The position numbers and the translations under genes are program-made. From assembly GCF_016433145.1 (NCBI RefSeq), contig NC_058131.1, positions 31,255,705 through 31,319,027 on the forward strand: a stretch of DNA of 63,323 nucleotides. Reading direction: 5' to 3'. This stretch comes from Gracilinanus agilis. Lineage: Eukaryota. The notes below the pieces were generated by a model. The model ran no database searches. It worked only from the letters and a program-made list of their open reading frames with translations, and was not told where the DNA came from. Below, one piece after another: positions 4,290-60,548 of the stretch; position 1 is the first letter of the stretch, and each line of letters begins with the position of its first letter.

Positions 4290-4735
4290 GACTTGTGTGT
4301 GAATTGGATTTAAGTGAGGCAGAGCAGCACAAAGTCAGCAGCCTCACTCTCTTCTAGCTTCCACTGAAGTTCAGTAGCAAGACAAAAATCAGGATGACTG
4401 GCGATGGCCTGGGTTGCCGTGGATGACCTTGGTATCTTTGATGTCTGATCAAGTGTGTTTGAGCTGCCTTCAAGGGCCTTGGATTAAACTGTTCTCATCG
4501 GCCCCTTCTGCTGGGGAAAGTCTTCACATGCTTGGAGTAGACATCCCTCTAACTCACCAATGGGTCGGCAATATGCCAGTTACCTTCGACTTGGTTTAGC
4601 CCATCGTCTGAGATGGTTTACCAGGATATGGATGCTGCACATGCTACAGCTCCTTAGAGACGCAGTTGAGAGTTGGGTCACAGGTAGACACCAAAGGTGG
4701 ATGAGCGGCCCTCACACCAGAAATGCTGGTCCTCA
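4290..4735 (+). mobile_element. Marsupial RTE-related SINE/fragment
   Basis: gtgtgaattggatttaagtgaggcagag...gatgactggcgatggcc...caccaaaggtggatgagcggccc, recognised from memory of marsupial repeats; family uncertain. Confidence 0.45.
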
Positions 4736-6405: not shown

Positions 6406-6456
6406 TATAAAGGTCCTGTCACTCATTGCCTGCTCAGACACAGAACTGCCAGACAG
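6406..6456 (+). promoter_or_regulatory. TATA box (6406-6411) and short non-coding exon 1 of the REG-like gene
   Basis: TATAAA followed about 45 nt later by the strong donor cag|gtaagt (GT at 6457); REG genes have a non-coding first exon. Confidence 0.75.
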
Positions 6457-6877
6457 GTAAGTAGAGGAAGGACCTGGGGAGGAAGGGTCACCTGGGATTC
6501 CAGCCTCACTCTCTGAAGAGGAGCAACCAAACCTCAGGGACAGGGCTGTCTTTGGGAGAGGGGTCAGCAGATGGCTATGGCAGAAGAAGCCTGCTGGAGG
6601 GGCCCTTGAGCCTCAAACCTGCCATCAGCTTCTCTGTTGTTTCTTGAGTCCCTGGTTTTCCACAGATCTGGGAAAGAAGAAAAGGGGTTCTCATGAGAAT
6701 ATGCCACCAGGTCTAGAGGGAGAGAGGAGGGGAGCACAATGCTCTTTTGTCCTTTCTTCCCTTTCATGATCTCATCTCTGGGCTCTCCTCCTAGCTGGGG
6801 TTGGCAGTGGGGGTTGAGGGGTTCATGGTGCTCTGTATCTTATGTCTATGCTCTCTGTCCCTTCAGATTCTGAGGCA

Positions 6878-6941
6878 ATGCTGCCCCTCAACTTCTCAGG
6901 GCTGCTCTTGGCCTGCCTGCTGCTCACAGGCCTGGCCCGTG
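6878..6941 (+). CDS. REG-like exon 2: signal peptide MLPLNFSGLLLACLLLTGLAR(G)
   Basis: Acceptor cttcag ends at 6866, ATG at 6878, hydrophobic core, donor gtgag at 6942 (phase 1). Confidence 0.9.
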
Positions 6942-9915
6942 GTGAGTCCTTCTTGTCCCTCCTCCTCCTTCACTTCCTAGCTGTGCTTGGGGACAGCCTG
7001 TGTGTATGTGGAGATGTAGAGGAGGAGCAGACCCAGAGGGAAAAGTGCAGGGGCTGTGATGTTGGAGAGGGGATGGGGCAGCCAAGAAGAGGGAAAAAGG
7101 ACATTCGGGAATTGAAGAGGATAGTTGTTCCAGGTCTCCCGTTATCTAGCCTCTTGTCATTCCTCTTTCAGGTGTGGATGCTGCTGCTGCCCCTGCTGCT
7201 GCTGCCCCTGCTGCTGCTGCTGCCGCCGCTGCCCCTGATGCTTCTGCTGTTGCTGCCCCTGATGCTGCCCCTAAAGCTGCCCCTGATGCTGCCCCTAAAG
7301 ATACCCCTGATGATGCTGCTGTAGCTGCCCCTGATGCTGCTGCTGAAGCTGCCTCTAATGCTGCCGCTGAAGCTACCTCTGATGGTGCCCCTGAAGGTAC
7401 CCCCGAAGCTGCCCCTGAAGGTGCCCCTGAAGCTGCCCCTGATGCTGCTGCTGAAGCTGTCCCTGATGCTGCCGCTGAAGCTGCCTCTGATGCTGCTGCT
7501 GAAGCTGCCTCTGATGCTGCCCCTGAAGGTGCCCCTGAAGCTGCCCCTGATGCTGCCCCTGAAGCTGCCTCTGATGCTGCCCCTGAAGGTGCCCCTGAAG
7601 CTGCCTCTGATGCTGCTCCTGAAGCTGTCCCTGATGCTGCCCCTGATGCTGCTGTTGTTGCTGCCCCCGCTGCTGCCGCTGCTGCTCTTCGGAGGTCCTG
7701 TCCTGAAGGGTCCAAGGCATTTGGCTCCTACTGCTATGGCTACTTCAGTTTTGAGGAGACGTGGTATGCTGCAGAGGTTGGTTAGGGGAAAATCTCCCAG
7801 CAGGGATGGGGATGCCTTTCTACTTATTTCTTTGTTGTTGTGTTTATCCCACTACCACTGACAACTTAGTCATTGGTAATAAGCCCTTCCTCTCTCTCTA
7901 GAAGGGTCCCAAAATCTTGTTTCTCCTTTTTCTCTGATCCAAGACTTTCCTTCTCCTCTGGCTCCATTTACTCTCCCCCTGTGGCTCTCTATCTGTGTCC
8001 CTTTGTCGGGCGGCCCCAGCCCTCTTGTCTTCTTTCTGTGGACCATCCTGTCTCCATACTGCTCTTGAAAGTCGGATGTCTATCTTGTCTTTTTTCTCCA
8101 CCTTTCATGAGGAAAGGCCCCATTCTCTCTTCTTTCCTTATAGCTTAGCTGCCAGAGACAGACCTCAGGCCACCTGGCCTCCCTGATGAATGGGGCTGAA
8201 GCTTCCTTTGTGGCCTCCCTGGTGGCTGAGAGTGGGGGCAGCCGGAATGCCATCTGGATTGGCCTCCAAGATCCTAACAAGGTTTGTCTCACACACCTGC
8301 CAGCCCCTCTGTTATCCCAGGTAATAGGGCTCTGGATGCATTTTCAGGCCATGCCAGCCCTCCTCCATTTGGAGTTTGGGAAAGAAGGAATTGGGAAGAA
8401 GTGGTGGGGCTGCTGAGGAGGAAGGCTCATTTCTGGGGGGATCTAATTTTCATGGCTCTGCCCAAGAGTCCTCAGTCAGAGTCAATCTGTTCATTTAAGA
8501 ACAATCTCTTTCACACGCATACCCAGACCTTCAAACTCCTCTTCCTCTTTCTCACAATCATTTATTTAATTGGAGGTCCGTCTCCATCTTGATGGAGATA
8601 AGACACAAAATTACCTAAGCTTTCCTAAGAGAACCAAGCAAACAGCAGACCAGGGAGGGCTGTTCACAAATGCTAAAGGAAAAATAGAGTGTGAACACTT
8701 TTTAAATACATGAATATCTCATCACCTGTGATTACATCATGTTAGGAGGATTCATGTAGTATCTAAGTACAAGATAGAGAGCCCATCCCCATCCCCATCC
8801 CCAGATCCTTGACATAGTCACAGGATGTAATCACTGATTTGAACACCTTTTTGTCCCTATCTGATGGGCTGAAAAGGCAGAGTCTTGGATGAGGACTCCA
8901 TTCGTTGGTAGGTCTACTTGTGCTTTAGATGGTGAGATTTGGGCCAGATCAGTGAGGGAGAAGTGAGGGAAGCTTCTATGAGAAGATGGGCTTCCTGTTA
9001 GATTCTGCAGATGGGAAATTACAGAATTTCAGATTTTGAAGGTATCTTGAGGTGGTCATCTAGTCCAACCTCTGCCCAAAATAGAATCTCCAATACACCA
9101 GACTCCCTACAATTAGCCTTTGCTTGAAGACCTCCAGGGAGAAGGACTGCAAAGTGACCTATCCTACTGCTGGGTCCCACTTCTTGTTGGGAGGACTCTT
9201 CTTTGTGCTTTCTTGCACTCGGTGCTTCTAAATGTGGTTGAGAGGAACAAGGCCAATCTCCTGTCCACATGACAGGGCTACAAGAAGGATTATGTAGGAT
9301 TTTGATGAATGGATGATTGTATTATTGGAAGAATTCAAGGAAAGAGCAAGTGTGGGGAGTTTTGAGGAGAATGAGGCATAGTTGTGGATGTGTTCGAAGG
9401 GGTTTTCTCTACCAACTGCCCTCCCCCTATAGAATGGTCGCTGGTTATGGAGCAGCACTGCCTTATTCACCTACCAAGCCTGGACAAAAAATGCCCCAAG
9501 CAGCAACAATCCTGGATACTGTGCAACCTTGACACCAGAAACAGGTGAGAGCAGAAGAGGGAGAACCAGCCAACCCCAATTCTCCTAACCTCACAATCAA
9601 TTTGTATCTAATCAACCTGGGCCCCCTCTATTTGCTAGACTATGCTTTTGGGGAGGAGAACCCCTCTTCACTATGAGGAATATATTTTCTCTGTGTTCTT
9701 CTTGTAACCACTAGCCTAAAACTGGTTACAAGTTTGTTAATGGGTTGGGGGTGTCTGTCACAAGGCTGGGGGCTGGGGCTACCAGAGTGGGGGCCAGAAG
9801 CTGCACCCTATCTGCTGGCCAACTCGATGAATCCCATTTCTCTCTAGGATTCCTAAAATGGAAAGATCAGCTATGTTTGAACAAGAACTTCTACATCTGC
9901 AAATTCAAACGCTAG
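6878..9915 (+). CDS. Secreted REG-family (REG1/lithostathine-like) C-type lectin, 328 aa, with an extended acidic Ala-rich N-terminal repeat region
   Basis: Coding exons 6878-6941, 7172-7776, 8144-8281, 9433-9544 and 9848-9915 all have AG/GT ends, and the intron phases (1,0,0,1) match REG genes. The spliced product has a signal peptide, SCPEGSKAFGSYCY, LSCQ, IWIGLQDP, WxWSS, PGYC and WKDxxC...YICKFK, with six conserved Cys. It lacks the REG3 EPN loop, so it is closer to REG1. The exact orthologue is not assignable. Confidence 0.93.
7172..7686 (+). repeat. Coding minisatellite, 12-bp unit GCTGCCCCTGA(T/A), about 35 units
   Basis: Encodes AAPD/AAPE/GAPE/AASD/AAAE tetrapeptides; 7501-7560 and 7561-7620 differ at only 2 positions. 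Confidence 0.95.
7172..7776 (+). CDS. REG-like exon 3: 171-aa Ala/Pro/Asp/Glu repeat followed by the start of the C-type lectin domain
   Basis: Acceptor tttcag ends at 7171; the frame is open for 605 nt and ends ...LRRSCPEGSKAFGSYCYGYFSFEETWYAAE; donor GT at 7777. Confidence 0.9.
8144..8281 (+). CDS. REG-like exon 4 (LSCQRQTSGHLASLMNGAEASFVASLV...IWIGLQDPNK)
   Basis: 138 nt, AG/GT bounded, WIGL motif, matches the REG exon 4 pattern. Confidence 0.93.
9433..9544 (+). CDS. REG-like exon 5 (NGRWLWSSTALFTYQAW...PSSNNPGYCATLTPETG)
   Basis: 112 nt, acceptor tatag, donor gtgag; resembles REG1 NRRWHWSSGSLVSYKSW...PSSVNPGYC. Confidence 0.93.
9848..9915 (+). CDS. REG-like exon 6 (FLKWKDQLCLNKNFYICKFKR*)
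   Basis: Acceptor ctctag ends at 9847, stop TAG 9913-9915, typical REG C-terminus. Confidence 0.93.
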
Positions 9916-10076: not shown

Positions 10077-10082
10077 AATAAA
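10077..10082 (+). terminator. Polyadenylation signal of the REG-like gene
   Basis: First AATAAA after the stop, about 160 nt downstream. Confidence 0.7.
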
Positions 10083-10364: not shown

Positions 10365-10605
10365 ACAAAAGCAGATTTTTGCAAGCATATTAGGGAAAGC
10401 CTTTTTTTTAACCCCTTACCTTCCATCTTGGAGTCAATACTGTATATTGGCTCCAAGGCAGAAGAGCGGTAAGGGTAGGCAATGAGAGTTAAGTGACTTG
10501 CCCAGGGTCACACAGCTGGGAAGTGTCTGAGGCCAGATTTGAACCTAGGACCTCCCGTCTCTAGGCCTGGCTCTCAATCCACTGAGCTACCCAGCTACTG
10601 CCTAG
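10365..10605 (-). mobile_element. Opossum-type tRNA-derived SINE
   Basis: aaccccttaccttccatcttggagtcaatac...gtgacttgcccagggtcacacagctggg...actgagctacccagct. Confidence 0.85.
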
Positions 10606-15590: not shown

Positions 15591-18233
15591 ATAAGGGGAT
15601 ACAACACAAGAAAGGGAAGAGTCACTGATTTTTCTCTTCTGGCCTTTTGTCAATCCTCCTTCAGATTGTTTCTGCCACCTTTAACACCGCCAATTCTCTC
15701 CCTCTCCTCCTCCATGTCTTAGCCTATCTGAACTGAAATGGATAACCAGGCAGTATCCAGATAAGTGGCAGAGCTGGGATTTGAACCCACAAAGTGGACA
15801 CAAAGAACCAGCAAGATTTTGTCAAAAACAGGTTATAAATATGAGGAATTCAGAGAAATGAGAGAAACTAAGATACGCCATTGGATACATTGCCAAGCAC
15901 AACCTCTGTCCTGGATGTTTAAACTTAACTGCTTTTCTTTATCAAAGATAGTTTAGTCCAGAGGATGGCTGGTGAGAAATAACGGGTACAATAAAGACAA
16001 AGGGCACCAATAAATTTTTTAAATTTATTTATTTACTGTCTTTAAAAATAGGTCTTCATGCTTTACTTGTAGCCATTTTGGGTGGTGTAGGGGATCCATT
16101 GATTTCCTCTTGACCCACCTGATGAAATCCTGGAATATAAAAAGAGCAAGCAACAGAAGCCAAGACTGGTAAGCTAATAATTAATGAGTTAGCATTGATA
16201 GAGCATCTTATAAAGCACTTTTTATCTCCAACTTATGATGAGGAAACTGAGGCAGACAGAGGTTAAGGGACTTGCCCAGGGACATACAATTAGTGTATGC
16301 CTAGGGCTGGATTTGAGTTCAGGTCTTTCTTACTCCAAGTCCTGTGTTTTATTTATTGTTACTTTGGATCTTAAAAAATGTGAAAACATTCCTTAGCCAG
16401 GATTGATGGGATTAGAGGATGACTAGGAAGCCCAGGGTTCAGGATGCTACAATGTTCTTTCCTTTATGTACTTCTCTTTTTAGGTGAATGGGTTACCAGT
16501 TCGATTTATTTGAGAAATACTATAGAATTTACTCAGATTTTAGCAAAACATTTAGGAAAGTCTTTCATGTTCTTCTTTGGGGAAAGATGGAAAGATATGT
16601 GCTAAACAATTGTACAGTTGGATGGGTTCGGAAAAAATGGAATGTTCACATGGACTAGAGCAAAGATCCATGGTTAAATGGCGATCTGGAAGGAAATCTC
16701 AAGTGGGGGAGTGCCCCAGGCATCGGTGAGTGGCCCCATCCTATTAAAATTGCAATCAGTGACTCAGATAAAAGTAGAGATGACACGCTTAGTGCAAATT
16801 TCCAAATAACGTCAGAATAGGAGAGATGACATTCAGGATCCCGACAGGCTAGAACATCGGATCTAGTATTTTTAAAATGGAATTTAATAGTAAGAAATGC
16901 AAAGTCTTGTATTTGAATTAAAAACATTAATTTTGAGGGGACAAGATGTGAAAGTTATGCCTGGAGAGATTCATGTGAAAAGATCTGGAGAGTTTAGAGG
17001 GCAGAATATTCAATATGAGGCACCAGAGGCATGTGGCAGCCTAAAAAGTGAATGTGTGAGGATCAAAGGAAATCATTCTGATGAAGGTGTTTGTGTAGTG
17101 CCTGGCACAGAGTAGGCACTGTATAAATGATAACTATCATCGCCATTTTCCTCCTCCTTCTCATCATGATGCTCTGTTCTAGGGTTCCAGATTTAGTCTA
17201 GACACTGATGAACTGGAGGGTGTCCAGAAGAAAGGAACCACAATGGTATGAGACTTCAGCTCTTGCCATTTGAAGAAGAATTCTTCTGAAAGAATTAGGA
17301 GGGGTTAGCTTGGTGGCTCAATGAATAGAGAGCCAGGCTTAGAGATAAGGAGGTGCTGGGTTCAAATTTGACTTCAGACACTTTCTAGATATGTGATCCA
17401 GGGCAATTCATTTAACCCTCATAACCTAGTCCTTACTTCTCTTCTGTCTTGGAACTGATGTTTAGTATTAATTCAAAGACAGGAGGTAATTTTAAAAAAT
17501 TTAAAATTAAAAAATGGGGCTTAAATTTTAAATTTAAAAATTTAAATTTTTTAAAATGGGTTTTTAAAAATTTTAATTAAAAAAATGGGGATGTTTCACA
17601 TGGAGAAGAAAGGACTTAGAGGGTGAGAAGGTTTGAATGGGAAGCATAGTAATTGTCTTCAACTATCTGAAGGGCTGATTTGTAGACATTTCCCCTTTTC
17701 CCATTGCTAATTATGTCTTATTAAACCCCAGTTTTGAATTACTCCCACTGATGTGGATTGAAATGCCCCACAAACCCTGCTAAGTGGCTGTACACAATCA
17801 AAAGAACATAAAAACAGTAACTAGTTGATTAGTATAGGGCCACCTTTCAGATATGATGTATGAGGTGCTTAGATTCACAATTATTAGAAAACTCCTCACA
17901 TCAGTCTTTAAACATAACCTGGGTTGTTGGTTGGGGGTCTCTGGGCAGCAAGTACAGGTGACTCAGCTCCCCGGTCACACAGGATTAGGTTCAAACAAGG
18001 CTCAGTTTCCACACTCACTGCCTTCTTTAGAGTCTGCCAGAGTAAAACTTGACCTAAAGTTGCTCCTGGTTGTTTAATATATCATTAGTATGCCATTTAC
18101 TAATAGCAGTTTGCTCCCTCCTTCCCAGTGGGCAAACAGAATGGATCATGAGTAAAGCCACACACTGCCCAAACAAATGACCCCTTCCTTAGTAACTAAT
18201 CAAGATAAAAAGCATTCTTGAAAACCCCTATCT

Positions 18234-18302: not shown

Positions 18303-18479
18303 AATCTCTCTCTCTCTCTGGCTCTCTATGTCTCTCTNNNNNNNNNNNNNNNNNNNNNNNNNNNNNNNNNNNNNNNNNNNNNNNNNNNNNNNNNNNNNNN
18401 NNNNNNNNNNNNNNNNNNNNNNNNNNNNNNNNNNNNNNNNNNNNNNNNNNNNNNNNNNNNNNNNNNNNNNNNNNNNNNN
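18238..18479. repeat. (TC)n microsatellite running into an assembly gap (N 18338-18479)
   Basis: Direct reading. Confidence 0.97.
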
Positions 18480-19569: not shown

Positions 19570-20144
19570 TCCTTCTTTTCTTCCTTCTCCCTCCTTCCTC
19601 CCTCCTTCCTCCCTTCTTTCTTTCTTTCTTTCTTTCTTCCTTCCTTCCCCCCTCTCTCCTTCCTTCCTNNNNNNNNNNNNNNNNNNNNNNNNNNNNNNNN
19701 NNNNNNNNNNNNNNNNNNNNNNNNNNNNNNNNNNNNNNNNNNNNNNNNNNNNNNNNNNNNNNNNNNNNNNNNNNNNNNNNNNNNNNNNNNNNNNNNNNNN
19801 NNNNNNNNNNNNNNNNNNNNNNNNNNNNNNNNNNNNNNNNNNNNNNNNNNNNNNNNNNNNNNNNNNNNNNNNNNNNNNNNNNNNNNNNNNNNNNNNNNNN
19901 NNNNNNNNNNNNNNNNNNNNNNNNNNNNNNNNNNNNNNNNNNNNNNNNNNNNNNNNNNNNNNNNNNNNNNNNNNNNNNNNNNNNNNNNNNNNNNNNNNNN
20001 NNNNNNNNNNNNNNNNNNNNNNNNNNNNNNNNNNNNNNNNNNNNNNNNNNNNNNNNNNNNNNNNNNNNNNNNNNNNNNNNNNNNNNNNNNNNNNNNNNNN
20101 NNNNNNNNNNNNNNNNNNNNNNNNNNNNNNNNNNNNNNNNNNNN
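19570..20144. repeat. (TTCC/TTTC)n simple repeat running into an assembly gap (N 19669-20144)
   Basis: Direct reading. Confidence 0.97.
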
Positions 20145-44706: not shown

Positions 44707-45378
44707 TCAGGAAGAGAGGGGCAAGGCGTATTTGTAATGAGTTAAAGAAATGGTTATGATGGACCATTTGACAGATTTCAGTGTTTCATGGGATTTCCAG
44801 AAGCCAAGACTCTCATACAATCTTCTTGCTGGGAAATTCAGGCTAGAAGTGACCAGGACAATGCCATTGTACCCCTGGTCCTGGGCAAAATGGATCACAG
44901 ACTGAGTCAAGGTCTTGGCAATACCCTGGCCCCGGTGGTCCTGTCTCACAGATAAGTGTAACAGTTCCAGATGTTTCTGTACCCCTGAAGCCTTTTGGGC
45001 TGGGCAGGCACACACCAAGCCCACCACCTGACCCCTTGCCTCTGCCACCCAAAAACAGGACCCCCTGTCATTGAGGTAGGATGCCCTGATGTCCCACATG
45101 TCAGTGCGCAAAGTGTCATGTACATAATAGGAGAAGGGATACCTAGCAACCAGCCACAGCACAGCCAAGAGGCCTGGGATGGCCAGGAGAGACAGGAGGA
45201 GGGAGCCAGAGCCAAGGAGCAGGGCCCCCGGGCCCCCCAACAGGAGCAGGAAGCTTATTGGCTGCTTCAGCAAATTCCAGAAGTTGGGAACCACTTGCTG
45301 CAGCATCCCCTCTGCAAAAATGGCCCTCACCGAGCACCAGTCTTGGTCCTGGTATCTCCGGATTTCATAGGGAGCCAT
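44707..45378 (-). CDS. NAT8: NAT8/Camello-family GNAT N-acetyltransferase, copy 1 (223 aa)
   Basis: Starts MAPYEIRRYQ; hydrophobic segment at about aa 43-78; GSCFWVAE; motif A HRGQGIAK; FAQDQGY; LYESLGF. A splice acceptor just upstream (ctgcag, exon from 45407) indicates that the upstream extension in the ORF track is intronic. The symbol marks the family; 1:1 orthology is not established. Confidence 0.92.
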   Translation of the reverse strand: MAPYEIRRYQDQDWCSVRAIFAEGMLQQVVPNFWNLLKQPISFLLLLGGPGALLLGSGSLLLSLLAIPGLLAVLWLVARYPFSYYVHDTLRTDMWDIRASYLNDRGSCFWVAEARGQVVGLVCACPAQKASGVQKHLELLHLSVRQDHRGQGIAKTLTQSVIHFAQDQGYNGIVLVTSSLNFPARRLYESLGFWKSHETLKSVKWSIITISLTHYKYALPLSS

Positions 45379-48300
45379 GAAAGCTGCTGCTTCTAGTCCT
45401 TGGAGTCCTGCAGATGAAATCCAAGTGAGTCTATTCCCCACCCCCATCCCCAATGCCTGCCTTAATCACTCATTTTCCTCCCAAAGCCCAGCTCCTGACT
45501 CAGAACCCCAAAGAGGCCCCTGCCAGATGGGGGGTAAAAGAGCTCAAATTCAGCCCTCCACCTGCTCCAAATACTCCTCATGCCCTCTAGAGACATGCCG
45601 TGAAGGGATGTTTAAGGGGCTGACACAGCTGGAGACAGAAAAAATACCATGGCTCTCTCGACCCATCCAGGGCTGACTTTTCTAGGAAGAGTGGAAGGAC
45701 TGCTTGCTCTGGAAGGACCCAGGCTCTGAGGCAGAGGATTTCCCCCAAGAAAATGCCCCTTTCCCTCTCCCCTCACCTGCTCTCCAGATCGCTTCTCATC
45801 TCTTGTGGAAGCTTCCAGTCTGCCCCAGTGTACTGCAAACTCTGAACTGTCCTCCTCCCTGGCCACTCCCCAAGGTCTCCTTGGGAACTCCCCTAAGAGC
45901 CTGTCACAGGACAATAACCTTCCTTATGCTGGGATTGTCTGAGGGCAGCAGGGTGCTGCCTCTTACTCTCTGTGGGACTATCTGCCCTACTTTCTCCTCA
46001 TTAAAGGCTTGGAGGGGGAAGGAGGGAACTTCCTTCATAGCTTGTCTTTTCCAAAAAAACAAACAAACTATGCTGAGATACTTAAATATAGATTTATATC
46101 TACATTTTACAAAATTGCAACCAAGAAAAAGTCCATTATTTCAATTATAAATTCTTTTAAATGTTTAAATTAATATTATAAATGACCACGAATCTCTATT
46201 TTTCTTTTATTCTTAGTAGCAACATGAGATAGTAGGTAGAATTCTGTTTGGAATCGGGGGATCCTGGATTCAAATCCTACCTTCGACACTTACTTGCTGC
46301 TATATGACTGTTCACAAATCATTTATGCTTTAAAGGCATCTCGGAGCAGAACAGCTAGTCTGAGGGAAATCCCAAGGTCAGCTCTTACCCCAACTTCTCT
46401 TTCTAATATCTGCTGTAGCGCAGAGAGAGGGGGTCATGACAGTTTTTCAAGCTTTGGCTGAGTTCTGAAATCAGTTAGGAGTTTAGAATCTTGAAGGAGA
46501 GAAGTCAGTTGGTTTGGGGATTTCGTGGAGAGAGTCAGACCAGCTGAGCTGCTTCCTTCAAGATTCTAAACTCCTAACTGATTTCAGAACTCAGCCAAAG
46601 CTTGAAAAAACTGTCATGACCCCCTCTCTCTGCACTACACTGCCCACCTACAGATACGTTAATATAATTTTTTTGTTTTGTTACACAAATACTTCCAGTA
46701 AGCCAAACTTTACCTCAACCGCAAAGAAACTAGGAGTTACCTAAAGATAGATATAACTGCAGACATAGGCAGAAAGTCCAACCTCTGCCTAGATATTAAA
46801 AAATTTTCCTAAGTGGGGGCTTAGAGTGATTAAAATTGAACTTGACTTCTTACCTAAAATAAACTCCCTAAAACTGAACAGAGGGAACTACTGGGGCCTT
46901 ATAGGCCCTTGCCTCATTCCTTAGGCTTAAAATGAATCATTCTAAAAGGACATTACAAATAGGTAGTGCAGTGAAATCAAGAAGACTCATCTTCCTGAGT
47001 TCGAATTTGACTCCAGACACTTACTAGCTGGTTGATCCTAGGCAAGTCTTAACCTCCATCACTTAGCCCTTGCCGCTCTGTGTTAGAACTGATACTAAGA
47101 CAGGGTAAAGGTTTAAAAAAGACAACAAAGTGTCTAAGGCTGGTCTGTATGTTCCTGTACTGATAAAATAAAAGATTCACAGCAAAAACCTTAAAATTAA
47201 AAGAGAGAAAGAAAGAAAGTAAAGAAAGAGAAATGCTGACTACAAAGGATGAGAAGCCTTATGTAAAGACACGATGGTGACAAAGTGTTATGACGTTATA
47301 ATAACCGAGCTTGGCCCCAAAGGAGAGAGAAGTGAGGGCCATCTTCTTACTGCCTATAAGGCCAGACGGTTTTTACATGATGTCTTTCTTCTTCCTTAGA
47401 ATATGGGCTCCTTGAGATGTGATTTTGTCCTTTTGGGTGTATCCTTACTATTTAGCACAGTTTGTGGCATACAGTAAGCACTTAAGTGCTTATTTACATG
47501 GTTTTGCTAATTTCCTTTTTTTTGTTATAAAGGTTAATTCTTTGGGCAGGGAAAGGAGAAAGGATACAGAAGGAATGTAGGTGATAGAAAAACCAAAAGA
47601 TCAATAAAAATGTATTTTTAAAAGAGGCAAAGAAGAACCAGAGCAGCAGAGAATGAGGCCTGAGAGATAGAGATCCAGATGGGAGACCTTGAGATCCAGC
47701 CTCATTCCCTGGAGAGGACCCTTCTCTATCTCTGAGTCCTTTCCGGGGAACACTGTGACCCCAAGAGAGGAGGAAGCCACACGCCTCCAAGGATAACAAT
47801 CCAGAAGAGCTATGGAAGAGTAACAAAGTGTTCTTCCCAAAGACCAAATTCCTGACCTTAAGGGGAAGAGTTTCAAGACCAAATAAGAACCAGAGCCAAG
47901 TGTTACAAAGGGACATAGTGATAGGGAGGAGGAATAAACACACCTATTGGCCTTGGATCATAGTGGGAACCATGTGGAACATGTAAGGTGAGGGGGAGGG
48001 AGTTCACTTTCCAGCGTCCATGAGGGATTTCTTTCCCCTTGCAAAGAGTCAACCCTAAGGCATCATATAAGGCAGGAGGCCTGGATAGGCCCCAGAGGGA
48101 TTCAGGGCCCTTTAAGGGAGAAGTACAACTCTGTGACTGAAGTGTTATCTTCAAAGGAGAGAACTTTGCCCCTAGAGAAGTGTCCTCTCAGGGTTCCAGA
48201 CTGGAAGGATCTCTGTTGACAGTAAGGCTCACCCTAGTGAAGAGTTGCTTGTCTAACAAAGCCTAGTTCCAGGAGAAGCTCAAATTGAGCGTGGTATGCT

Positions 48301-59876: not shown

Positions 59877-60548
59877 TTAGCTTGAAGAAGAGACTGCATA
59901 CTTATAGAACAAAAAAGGGATAGCTGCCATCTTCCATTTCAGAGAATCAAAGGCTTCGTGTGATTTCCAGAAGCCCAGGCGCTCGTACAGTCTTTGAGCT
60001 GGGTAATTGAGGGCATGAGTACTCAGGACCACATTGTCATATCCCTGATCCTGGGCAAACTGGATCAAAGTCTGGGTCAGGGATTTGGCAATACCCTGGC
60101 CCCGATGTTCTTGGTCCACTGACAAATGTAGCAACTCCAGGTTTTTCCATCTTTCTGAAGCCTCTTGTGCTGGGTGGGCACCCACCATGCCCACCACCCG
60201 ACCCTCTGACTCTGCTACCCAGAAACAAGATCCTCTGTCACGGAGGTAGAATTTCTTGATGTCCCTCATGTCTGTGTGCAAGGCGTGGTCCACCATAGAG
60301 GAGAAGGGATATCTAGCAACCCACCACAGGACAGCCAGGAGGCCCAAGAAGGCCAGGAGAGACAGGATGTAAGAACCAGACTCAAGGAACAGGGCACCTG
60401 GGCCCCCCAACAGGAGCAGGAAGCCTCTTGGCTGCTTCAGCAGATGAAGGAAGCAAGAAGGAATGTCATTCAGTGTTCCCTTAGTGAATATGTCTATCAC
60501 TGTCTCCCTGTCTTGGTCTTGATATTTCCGTATGTGATAGGGAGCCAT
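59877..60548 (-). CDS. NAT8: NAT8/Camello-family GNAT N-acetyltransferase, copy 2 (223 aa)
   Basis: Starts MAPYHIRKYQ; LLLLGGP hydrophobic segment; GSCFWVAESEGRVVGMVGA; HRGQGIAK; FAQDQGY; LYERLGF. Intact ORF with a pyrimidine-rich acceptor (ctatag) 30 nt upstream of the ATG. The symbol marks the family. Confidence 0.94.
   Translation of the reverse strand: MAPYHIRKYQDQDRETVIDIFTKGTLNDIPSCFLHLLKQPRGFLLLLGGPGALFLESGSYILSLLAFLGLLAVLWWVARYPFSSMVDHALHTDMRDIKKFYLRDRGSCFWVAESEGRVVGMVGAHPAQEASERWKNLELLHLSVDQEHRGQGIAKSLTQTLIQFAQDQGYDNVVLSTHALNYPAQRLYERLGFWKSHEAFDSLKWKMAAIPFLFYKYAVSSSS

What the first reader, a model, noticed from the sequence alone, without database searches (positions are those of the whole stretch)
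7172..7776. REG1-like secreted lectin with a roughly 170-residue acidic Ala/Pro tetrapeptide prosegment
Seen: exon 3 is 605 nt, bounded by AG (7170-71) and GT (7777-78) in the phases REG genes require. It encodes 171 residues of AAPD/AAPE/GAPE/AASD/AAAE-type units before LRRSCP. By hand count this segment has 33 Asp/Glu, only 2 Lys, and no aromatic residue or Cys. The rest of the gene is intact (TATA box, signal peptide, six Cys, stop, AATAAA). Established: REG1/REG3 proteins are about 165-175 aa, with only a short N-terminal segment (roughly 10 aa) between signal peptide and lectin domain. Inference: the 328-aa product is a structurally new REG type in which that segment has expanded more than tenfold into a disordered polyanion. 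Possible roles are a strong inhibitory or solubilising propeptide, a Ca2+/mineral-binding crystal modifier (REG1 and bird eggshell REG-like lectins are linked to CaCO3), or a released bioactive peptide.
Basis: partly seen in the sequence, partly recalled or inferred. Interest (0 to 1): 0.88.

Follow-up and report, generated by a model that had tools for sequence, protein, structure and literature searches.

The report
Opossum REG1 lectin with expanded acidic propeptide
In the agile gracile opossum, a 12-base repeat has expanded in frame inside the REG1 (lithostathine) gene, so the short propeptide becomes about 171 acidic Ala/Pro-rich residues; this is real in the DNA and hidden by the public annotation, but it is unproven in RNA or protein and may be functionally neutral.

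Summary
The window is Gracilinanus agilis chromosome sequence (GCA_016433145.1).

**Gene model.** It holds one intact REG1/lithostathine-like gene. Coding exons are 64/605/138/112/68 nt, all with AG/GT borders, giving 328 aa.

**The expansion.** Exon 3 carries a 12-nt (higher-order 24-nt) minisatellite. It encodes 171 residues (88 A, 25 P, 18 D, 15 E, 2 K, no aromatic residue or Cys), net charge about -31. This segment lies between the signal peptide and a conserved Arg-Arg site that aligns with the Arg11 tryptic site of human lithostathine.

**Comparison with relatives.** In genomic DNA of five other marsupials the same exon is about 119-140 nt, behind the same acceptor, and encodes a 12-18 aa Ala-rich propeptide. 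So this is a lineage-private, in-frame +486 nt expansion of an existing Ala/Pro tract.

**Public annotation.** The RefSeq model (212 aa) skips the repeat only through a non-canonical junction that reads into intron 2. The species' published RNA-seq (kidney, muscle, liver) covers no REG-expressing tissue.

**Evidence on function.** Codon use in the repeat is uniform (a DNA-slippage signature) and shows no sign of amino-acid-level selection. The lectin core is not decaying.

**Best reading.** An oversized, disordered, trypsin-removable acidic prosegment on an otherwise ordinary REG1. Translation and any new function remain untested. It is a new variant of a known kind, of moderate interest.

The parts
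6406..6411 (+). TATAAA box upstream of the putative 5'-UTR exon 1 (exon 1 donor GACAG|GTAAGT, last exon base 6456)
   Evidence: Pattern positions; sequence read. Promoter function and transcription start are inferred, not tested.
6867..6941 (+). Exon 2: start codon at 6878 and a 22-residue signal peptide ending ...LARG. Phase-1 donor G|GTGAGT.
   Evidence: borders and translation. One search aligns it with the signal peptides of 8 marsupial orthologues. predicts a helix at residues 6-20.
7172..7776 (+). Exon 3, 605 nt (about 119-140 nt in five other marsupials). It holds the repeat, the dibasic site and the start of the lectin domain.
   Evidence: The acceptor tract is nearly identical to that of Monodelphis: 17 of 20 pyrimidines and CAG|G.
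7174..7686 (+). In-frame minisatellite with a 12-nt unit (CCT GAT/GAA GCT GCC) and a 24-nt higher-order unit. It encodes the 171-aa acidic Ala/Pro prosegment (net charge about -31, pI 4.05).
   Evidence: AlphaFold2 gives pLDDT below 50 and no secondary structure over nearly all of residues 22-193.
7690..7695 (+). Arg-Arg codons just before Ser-Cys-Pro-Glu-Gly. This is the predicted tryptic activation site and aligns with Arg11 of mature human lithostathine.
   Evidence: alignment (query R2 to chain residue 11). Conserved as R-R or R-K in 5 of 7 other marsupial species. The Arg11-Ile12 trypsin cleavage of human REG1A is taken from PMC9369050.
8144..8281 (+). Exon 4 (138 nt), lectin domain
   Evidence: same size as in Monodelphis.
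9433..9544 (+). Exon 5 (112 nt), lectin domain
9848..9915 (+). Exon 6 coding part (68 nt) with stop TAG at 9913-9915. The AATAAA signal lies at 10077-10082.
4560..4682 (+). Upstream exon used by the RefSeq model to add 45 residues ahead of the signal-peptide Met. Probably a modelling artefact.
   Evidence: No Pfam family matches it. It would bury the signal peptide inside the protein.

Best explanation
This is a REG1/lithostathine-type secreted C-type lectin gene of Gracilinanus agilis. The short Ala/Pro-rich propeptide tract typical of marsupial REG1 (roughly E-A-A-P-A-A-A-A-A-x-x-R-R) has expanded by replication slippage or unequal exchange. The gain is 486 nt, about 40 units of 12 nt, all in frame. 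With the conserved canonical splice sites, the gene encodes a 328-aa precursor made of four parts: a signal peptide; a 171-aa disordered polyanionic Ala/Pro/Asp/Glu prosegment with ten Ser/Thr that could carry O-glycans; a conserved Arg-Arg site; and an ordinary 132-aa, mildly basic REG1 lectin core. The most likely mode of action is that of other REG proteins, exaggerated. The anionic flexible prosegment keeps the lectin soluble or inactive during secretion. Trypsin then removes it at Arg-Arg in the gut or pancreatic duct, releasing a normal REG1 core plus a 131-residue Lys/Arg-free acidic peptide. Shown: the DNA structure, its lineage specificity, the frame, the conserved splice sites and the intact core. 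Inferred: that the repeat is in the mRNA and protein, that trypsin removes it, and that it modulates solubility or activity. It may equally be a tolerated, near-neutral length variant.
For: The gene model and residue counts come, and the repeat. REG1 identity rests on Pfam Lectin_C and human lithostathine 1LIT at 1.2e-45, with Arg aligned to Arg11. The REG3-type loop insertion is absent. The window is identical to GCA_016433145.1 CM028236.1. Monodelphis has exon sizes 64/119/138/112/68 against 64/605/138/112/68 here, with a near-identical acceptor tract. Exon 3 is about 119-140 nt and contiguous in the genomic DNA of Monodelphis, Macrotis, Dromiciops, Sminthopsis and Sarcophilus, always behind ...cag|GTGAG. 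A Logan RNA-derived contig (SRR8048115) encodes the Sarcophilus protein contiguously, so the homologous exon 2-3 junction is used in vivo in a relative. Both ends of the array resemble the ancestral GCC CCT GCT GCT GCT GCC tract. The RefSeq model can be reproduced only with CC..TG, CT..GC or TT..CT junctions that read 6-8 nt into intron 2. The RNA-seq reported with the genome paper is from kidney, muscle and liver only (PMC8390783). The authentic acceptor has 17 of 20 pyrimidines and CAG|G. The 18 in-frame internal AGs have 12-14 of 20 pyrimidines, and 17 of them are AAG. The core is not decaying: dN/dS is 0.45 against Monodelphis, it has fewer private changes than Monodelphis (7-10 against 13-16), and all six Cys and 29 invariant columns are kept. 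Charges are prosegment -31 and core +2.5, pI 8.5. AlphaFold2 predicts disorder. For precedent, the anionic flexible REG3 prosegment is removed by trypsin and inhibits activity (PMC2643518), and the REG1A undecapeptide is cut at Arg11-Ile12 and O-glycosylated at Thr5 (PMC9369050).
Against: There is no transcript or protein evidence for this species in any relevant tissue. The one public gene model leaves the repeat out. A 605-nt internal exon is unusually long. The repeat contains 18 in-frame AG sites and 5 phase-compatible xxG|GT sites (4 AAG|GT, 1 ATG|GT), so shorter in-frame isoforms are possible. Codon use in the repeat is uniform (Asp always GAT, Glu always GAA, Ser always TCT), and variation between units is mostly non-synonymous. 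This gives no sign of protein-level selection and fits neutral slippage. The assembly was built from 100-bp linked reads with gap closing, so the exact copy number is uncertain. The database searches found no second species with the expansion.
Confidence: 0.6

Rival explanations
1. The repeat is real DNA but is removed from most mRNA, either by one of the in-frame internal acceptors or as an in-frame 'exitron'. The secreted protein would then be a normal REG1 of about 166-200 aa, as the RefSeq model implies.
For: The RefSeq protein P0001 lacks the repeat. There are 18 in-frame AG sites and 5 phase-1 xxG|GT sites (4 AAG|GT, 1 ATG|GT) inside the array. Long internal exons are uncommon (general knowledge).
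Against: The RefSeq junction is non-canonical and reads into intron 2, mimicking the 'GE..' start of orthologues. It cannot rest on RNA from REG-expressing tissue. The authentic acceptor is conserved and much stronger than the internal AAG sites. The internal donors lack the +4 to +6 consensus.
Confidence: 0.17
2. The expansion is a recent, effectively neutral or mildly harmful VNTR allele, possibly polymorphic or private to the sequenced animal. Alternatively the gene is silent or on its way to becoming a pseudogene. Either way the repeat has no function.
For: Codon homogeneity and mostly non-synonymous differences between units. The expansion is seen in only one species. Prosegment length already varies from 12 to 18 aa among marsupials, showing a slippage-prone tract.
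Against: The rest of the gene is fully intact, with constrained evolution. The units have diverged to 75-84% identity, so the array is not brand new. The frame and the Arg-Arg site are preserved.
Confidence: 0.15
3. Assembly artefact: linked-read assembly or gap closing inflated or created the array.
For: The assembly comes from 100-bp stLFR reads, with mate-pair polishing and short-read gap closing. Gaps exist elsewhere in the window at 18338-18479 and 19669-20144.
Against: The longest exact internal repeat is 47 nt, shorter than the reads. The units carry many distinct variants (AAA, AAT, ACC, GTA, GGT, GTC, CCC) that must come from real reads. No N lies within 10 kb. Collapse, not expansion, is the usual error.
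Confidence: 0.06

Closest known systems
Human REG1A / lithostathine / pancreatic stone protein (PDB 1LIT, 1QDD)
   Same: A single C-type lectin-like domain with six Cys, E 1.2e-45 over 133 residues. The tryptic Arg sits at the same position before S/I-C-P-E-G. The gene has coding exons in the same phases. The N-terminal peptide is released by trypsin (PMC9369050).
   Different: The prosegment is 11 aa in human REG1A against 171-174 aa here. The human peptide is not a tandem repeat and is only weakly acidic.
Other marsupial REG1-like proteins (Monodelphis, Dromiciops, Vombatus, Sminthopsis, Sarcophilus, Trichosurus, Macrotis)
   Same: 71-78% identical over signal peptide plus core. They share the acceptor, the exon sizes, the Ala/Pro-rich propeptide beginning just after the signal-peptide cleavage site, and mostly the R-R/R-K site.
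   Different: Their propeptides are 12-18 aa with one or no acidic residue beyond the first Glu. Exon 3 is about 119-140 nt against 605 nt here.
REG3A (HIP/PAP) and Reg3-gamma anionic prosegment
   Same: [quoted passage not shown] This is the closest known mechanism.
   Different: The REG3 prosegment is about 11 aa. REG3 proteins carry a loop insertion that is absent here. Bactericidal activity has not been shown for marsupial REG1.
proMBP-1 / PRG2 (eosinophil major basic protein precursor)
   Same: An acidic propiece of about 90 aa lies N-terminal to a C-type lectin domain. It is thought to neutralise the core until cleavage (PMC11483036).
   Different: The propiece is unrelated and non-repetitive. 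The MBP core is strongly basic (pI 11.4) against pI 8.5 here. This gene is REG1 by sequence and gene structure.
Coding minisatellite (VNTR) expansions in secreted proteins such as mucins and salivary proline-rich proteins (general knowledge)
   Same: In-frame tandem DNA units with uniform codons give low-complexity, probably O-glycosylated, disordered segments whose length changes quickly between lineages.
   Different: Here the repeat sits in the activation peptide of a lectin zymogen-like precursor, not in a structural mucin domain.

Membership tests
REG family (REG1 subtype) of secreted C-type lectin-like proteins | Single C-type lectin-like domain of about 130 aa as the only folded domain | tested here: met
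   Pfam PF00059 at residues 217-326, E 2.4e-18, with no other family.
REG family (REG1 subtype) of secreted C-type lectin-like proteins | Closest solved or known relatives are REG1 proteins, without the REG3-type loop insertion | tested here: met
   1LIT scores 1.2e-45 against REG3A 2.6e-38. The 5-residue REG3 insertion is absent in alignment A1.
REG family (REG1 subtype) of secreted C-type lectin-like proteins | Six conserved Cys (three disulfides) | tested here: met
   Six Cys in the core. C198, C209, C226, C299 and C316 are invariant and C324 is nearly invariant across 14 sequences.
REG family (REG1 subtype) of secreted C-type lectin-like proteins | N-terminal secretion signal | tested here: met
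   A hydrophobic 22-residue N-terminus aligns with orthologue signal peptides and is predicted helical at residues 6-20. No dedicated signal-peptide predictor was available.
REG family (REG1 subtype) of secreted C-type lectin-like proteins | Conserved exon-intron structure and phases | tested here: met
   Coding exons of 64, 138, 112 and 68 nt are identical to Monodelphis. Only exon 3 differs, 605 against 119 nt.
REG family (REG1 subtype) of secreted C-type lectin-like proteins | Tryptic Arg immediately upstream of the first Cys | tested here: met
   R-R-S-C-P-E-G aligns to R11-I-S-C-P-E-G of lithostathine. Actual cleavage is not testable here.
REG family (REG1 subtype) of secreted C-type lectin-like proteins | Short (about 11-18 aa) N-terminal prosegment, total length about 165-180 aa | tested here: not met
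   171 aa (174 with L-R-R), 328 aa in total. This is the departure that makes it a variant. It does not affect homology-based membership.
REG family (REG1 subtype) of secreted C-type lectin-like proteins | Expression in exocrine pancreas or gut epithelium | not testable with these tools
   The only RNA-seq reported with the genome paper is from kidney, muscle and liver.
proMBP / PRG2-type acidic-propiece lectins | Strongly basic lectin core (pI about 11) neutralised by the propiece | tested here: not met
   The core has pI 8.5 and net charge +2.5. The MBP-1 pI of 11.4 is from PMC11483036.

The most novel reading that the evidence does not exclude
The giant polyanionic Ala/Pro prosegment is translated, fixed in the Gracilinanus lineage and kept by selection as a new functional module. 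It could be a much stronger intramolecular inhibitor or solubiliser of a fibril-prone REG1 core. It could also act after tryptic release as a 131-residue protease-resistant acidic (probably O-glycosylated) peptide with its own activity, for example binding Ca2+ or mineral, binding cationic antimicrobials, or serving as a decoy substrate for Glu/Asp-specific bacterial proteases.
Probability: 0.2. Interest if true: 0.6.

Novelty: new variant of a known kind. Interest (0 to 1): 0.42.

Why it matters
If translated, this is a natural experiment on the REG activation peptide, with a roughly 15-fold longer and 30-fold more charged prosegment on an otherwise ordinary lectin core. It could show how prosegment length and charge control REG solubility, fibril formation and activity. 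It also shows how a homology-guided annotation can hide a lineage-specific coding expansion behind a non-canonical intron. If it proves neutral or unspliced, it is only a species-specific coding minisatellite of local interest.

Tried and rejected
(1) I searched for any repeat-bearing relative. I used the lectin region with the length window of the whole protein, the exon-3 ORF and an exhaustive HMMER scan of 1.84 billion representatives. These returned only bacterial low-complexity hits and mis-modelled or multi-domain lectins. None had an acidic Ala/Pro N-terminal repeat.

(2) I looked for independent (Logan) contigs of the G. agilis exon or transcript and found none.

(3) I tried to reproduce the RefSeq junction with canonical splice sites. 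This is impossible; only CC..TG, CT..GC or TT..CT junctions fit.

(4) I looked for a selection signal inside the repeat. Codon use is uniform and most variants are non-synonymous, so the test is uninformative or leans neutral. The absence of stop codons is expected for this unit and is not evidence of coding constraint.

(5) I suspected a mosaic or paralogous history because global MAFFT intron alignments gave K of about 0.5-0.7. Local blastn shows 71-78% identity along the whole gene, so the MAFFT figures were alignment artefacts. Only intron 2 and exon 2 are unusually similar, at 88-97%.

(6) I looked for other REG genes in the window and found none. There is only a weak, stop-ridden hit near 17797-17937 on the minus strand.

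(7) The AlphaFold2 model is poor overall (mean pLDDT 48), so I ran no fold search.
Full report
**What is there**

The window is identical over 11.4 kb to Gracilinanus agilis assembly GCA_016433145.1, chromosome record CM028236.1, near 31.26 Mb. Reading the sequence and joining 6878-6941, 7172-7776, 8144-8281, 9433-9544 and 9848-9915 gives a 987-nt ORF of 328 aa. Every internal border is AG/GT.

The C-terminal 135 residues are a C-type lectin-like domain (Pfam PF00059, E 2.4e-18). Its best solved relative is human lithostathine/REG1A (1LIT, E 1.2e-45), ahead of REG3A (2.6e-38) and REG4. The domain has six Cys and lacks the loop insertion of REG3 proteins. No second REG gene lies in the window.

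**The repeat**

Tandem Repeats Finder reports a period-12 array of 40.7 copies at 7196-7686, score 458. Self-similarity peaks at a 24-nt lag (0.84).

- In codons, the unit is CCT-GAT/GAA-GCT-GCC (P-D/E-A-A).
- Net charge is about -31 and pI 4.05.
- The core left after Arg-Arg is 132 aa with pI 8.5 and charge +2.5.
- The motif occurs nowhere else in the window.
- AlphaFold2 gives pLDDT below 50 and no secondary structure over nearly all of residues 22-193. The model as a whole is poor.

**Origin**

Protein searches returned REG1-like proteins from eight other marsupial species. All have a 12-18 aa Ala-rich (mostly Ala/Pro-rich) segment after the signal-peptide cleavage site, such as E-N-A-P-A-A-A-A-A-V-R-R in Monodelphis. 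This is followed by S/A-C-P-E-G.

I checked the genomic DNA of five of them: Monodelphis L003, Macrotis L001, Dromiciops L004, Sminthopsis L005 and Sarcophilus L006. In each, exon 3 is contiguous, about 119-140 nt, and begins at the same ...cag|GTGAG acceptor. Monodelphis coding exons are 64/119/138/112/68 nt, against 64/605/138/112/68 nt here. The difference is therefore a single in-frame gain of 486 nt.

Both ends of the G. agilis array still resemble the ancestral GCC-CCT-GCT-GCT-GCT-GCC tract. The expansion therefore grew out of the existing propeptide and was not inserted from elsewhere.

**Is it in the mRNA?**

No direct evidence exists. The acceptor at 7171|7172 is conserved almost base for base with Monodelphis. 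It has 17 of 20 pyrimidines and CAG|G. A Logan contig from run SRR8048115 encodes the Sarcophilus protein contiguously, so the homologous junction is used in a relative.

The RefSeq protein for this gene (P0001, 212 aa) omits the repeat. I enumerated all two-piece joins, and the RefSeq sequence can arise only from junctions 6948-7660, 6949-7661 or 6950-7662. These are CC..TG, CT..GC or TT..CT, and they read 6-8 nt into intron 2 to produce 'G-E-S'. The same read-through in Monodelphis also spells G-E-S, which suggests a homology-guided artefact.

[quoted passage not shown] The RefSeq model also adds 45 residues from an exon at 4560-4682, which would bury the signal peptide.

Against full inclusion, a 605-nt internal exon is long. 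The array holds 18 in-frame AG sites and 5 phase-compatible xxG|GT sites (4 AAG|GT, 1 ATG|GT). These sites are weak: 12-14 of 20 pyrimidines, A at -3 in 17 of 18, and donors without the +4 to +6 consensus. In-frame shorter isoforms still cannot be excluded.

**Is it an artefact?**

The assembly used 100-bp stLFR reads with gap closing. The longest exact repeat inside the array is 47 nt. The units carry many distinct variants, and the nearest N run is 10 kb away. The array is very likely real, though its exact copy number is less certain.

**Selection**

Inside the repeat, Asp is always GAT, Glu always GAA and Ser always TCT. Most differences between units change the amino acid. This is the signature of DNA-level slippage and gives no evidence for protein-level constraint. 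The open frame is an automatic property of the unit.

Outside the repeat the gene looks functional:

- dN/dS is 0.45 against Monodelphis.
- The core has fewer private substitutions than the Monodelphis gene, 7-10 against 13-16 with six outgroups.
- All invariant family columns are kept.

Unit divergence (75-84% identity) suggests the array is not brand new, so the gene has probably stayed intact while carrying it. This last step is inference.

**Mechanism**

In human REG1A, trypsin cuts Arg11-Ile12, freeing an O-glycosylated undecapeptide and a fibril-prone core (PMC9369050). In REG3A and Reg3-gamma, an anionic flexible prosegment inhibits the lectin through charge contacts with the basic core until trypsin removes it (PMC2643518).

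Here the Arg-Arg aligns with Arg11. I therefore read the repeat as an oversized version of that prosegment. A tryptic map predicts cuts after K56, K64 and R195/R196, leaving a 131-residue Lys/Arg-free acidic peptide. Ten Ser/Thr in an Ala/Pro context could carry O-glycans, which is inference.

proMBP-1 is an analogue with an acidic propiece of about 90 aa before a lectin domain (PMC11483036). It is not homologous in that part, and its core is far more basic.

**Novelty and verdict**

The searches found no REG-like protein with such a segment. They covered 5.8 billion clustered proteins and the best 150 hits from 1.84 billion representatives. Literature searches found no marsupial REG paper.

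It is a member of the REG1 family with one non-standard feature, so it is a new variant of a known kind. Interest is moderate. It is a neat lineage-private coding expansion hidden by the public annotation, possibly a useful natural experiment on REG prosegments, and possibly neutral.

The earlier scan note s1-171012 (Arg-Arg site between a polyanionic propeptide and a mildly cationic core) agrees with my charge calculation.

Noticed in passing
window 4560-4682 and 6942-7662: The RefSeq model of this gene (lithostathine-1-alpha-like, 212 aa) needs a non-canonical intron (CC..TG, CT..GC or TT..CT) that reads into intron 2. It also adds a 45-aa N-terminal extension from an exon 2.2 kb upstream, which buries the signal peptide. 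It is probably a homology-driven mis-annotation.
   Followed up: yes
window 44707-45453 (-) and 59877-60548 (-): Two uninterrupted ORFs (248 and 223 aa) on the minus strand both carry a GNAT acetyltransferase domain (Pfam PF00583, E 4e-20 and 2e-22). They are 65% identical to each other and look like tandem single-exon N-acetyltransferase genes (possibly NAT8-like; that name is from memory and was not tested).
   Followed up: partly
window 7277-7625: Every GAA-G in the repeat creates an AG in the same phase as the true acceptor (18 sites). Five xxG|GT sites (4 AAG|GT, 1 ATG|GT) are in the matching donor phase. Any internal splicing event would therefore stay in frame and only shorten the prosegment.
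   Followed up: partly
window 6878-7171 versus L003 4543-4835: Exon 2 and intron 2 are much more similar to Monodelphis (97% and 88%) than the rest of the gene (71-78% by blastn). The G. agilis core is closer to Australian marsupial sequences than the Monodelphis core is. This suggests uneven rates or past exchange between REG copies and remains unexplained.
   Followed up: partly
window 17797-17937 (-): A weak, stop-interrupted tblastn match (E 0.2-1.0) to the C-terminal part of the lectin domain lies next to the assembly gap at 18338-18479. It could be a decayed REG exon or chance.
   Followed up: no
L009 (Logan SRR8048115 contig, 1041 nt): A spliced transcript-like contig encodes the complete 173-aa Sarcophilus REG1-like protein with its short Ala-rich propeptide. 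This shows the orthologue is expressed and that the homologous exon 2-3 junction is used.
   Followed up: partly
window about 10400-10600: Just downstream of the poly(A) signal is a stretch that reads like a marsupial SINE/MIR-type element. I recognised it by eye only and did not test it.
   Followed up: no
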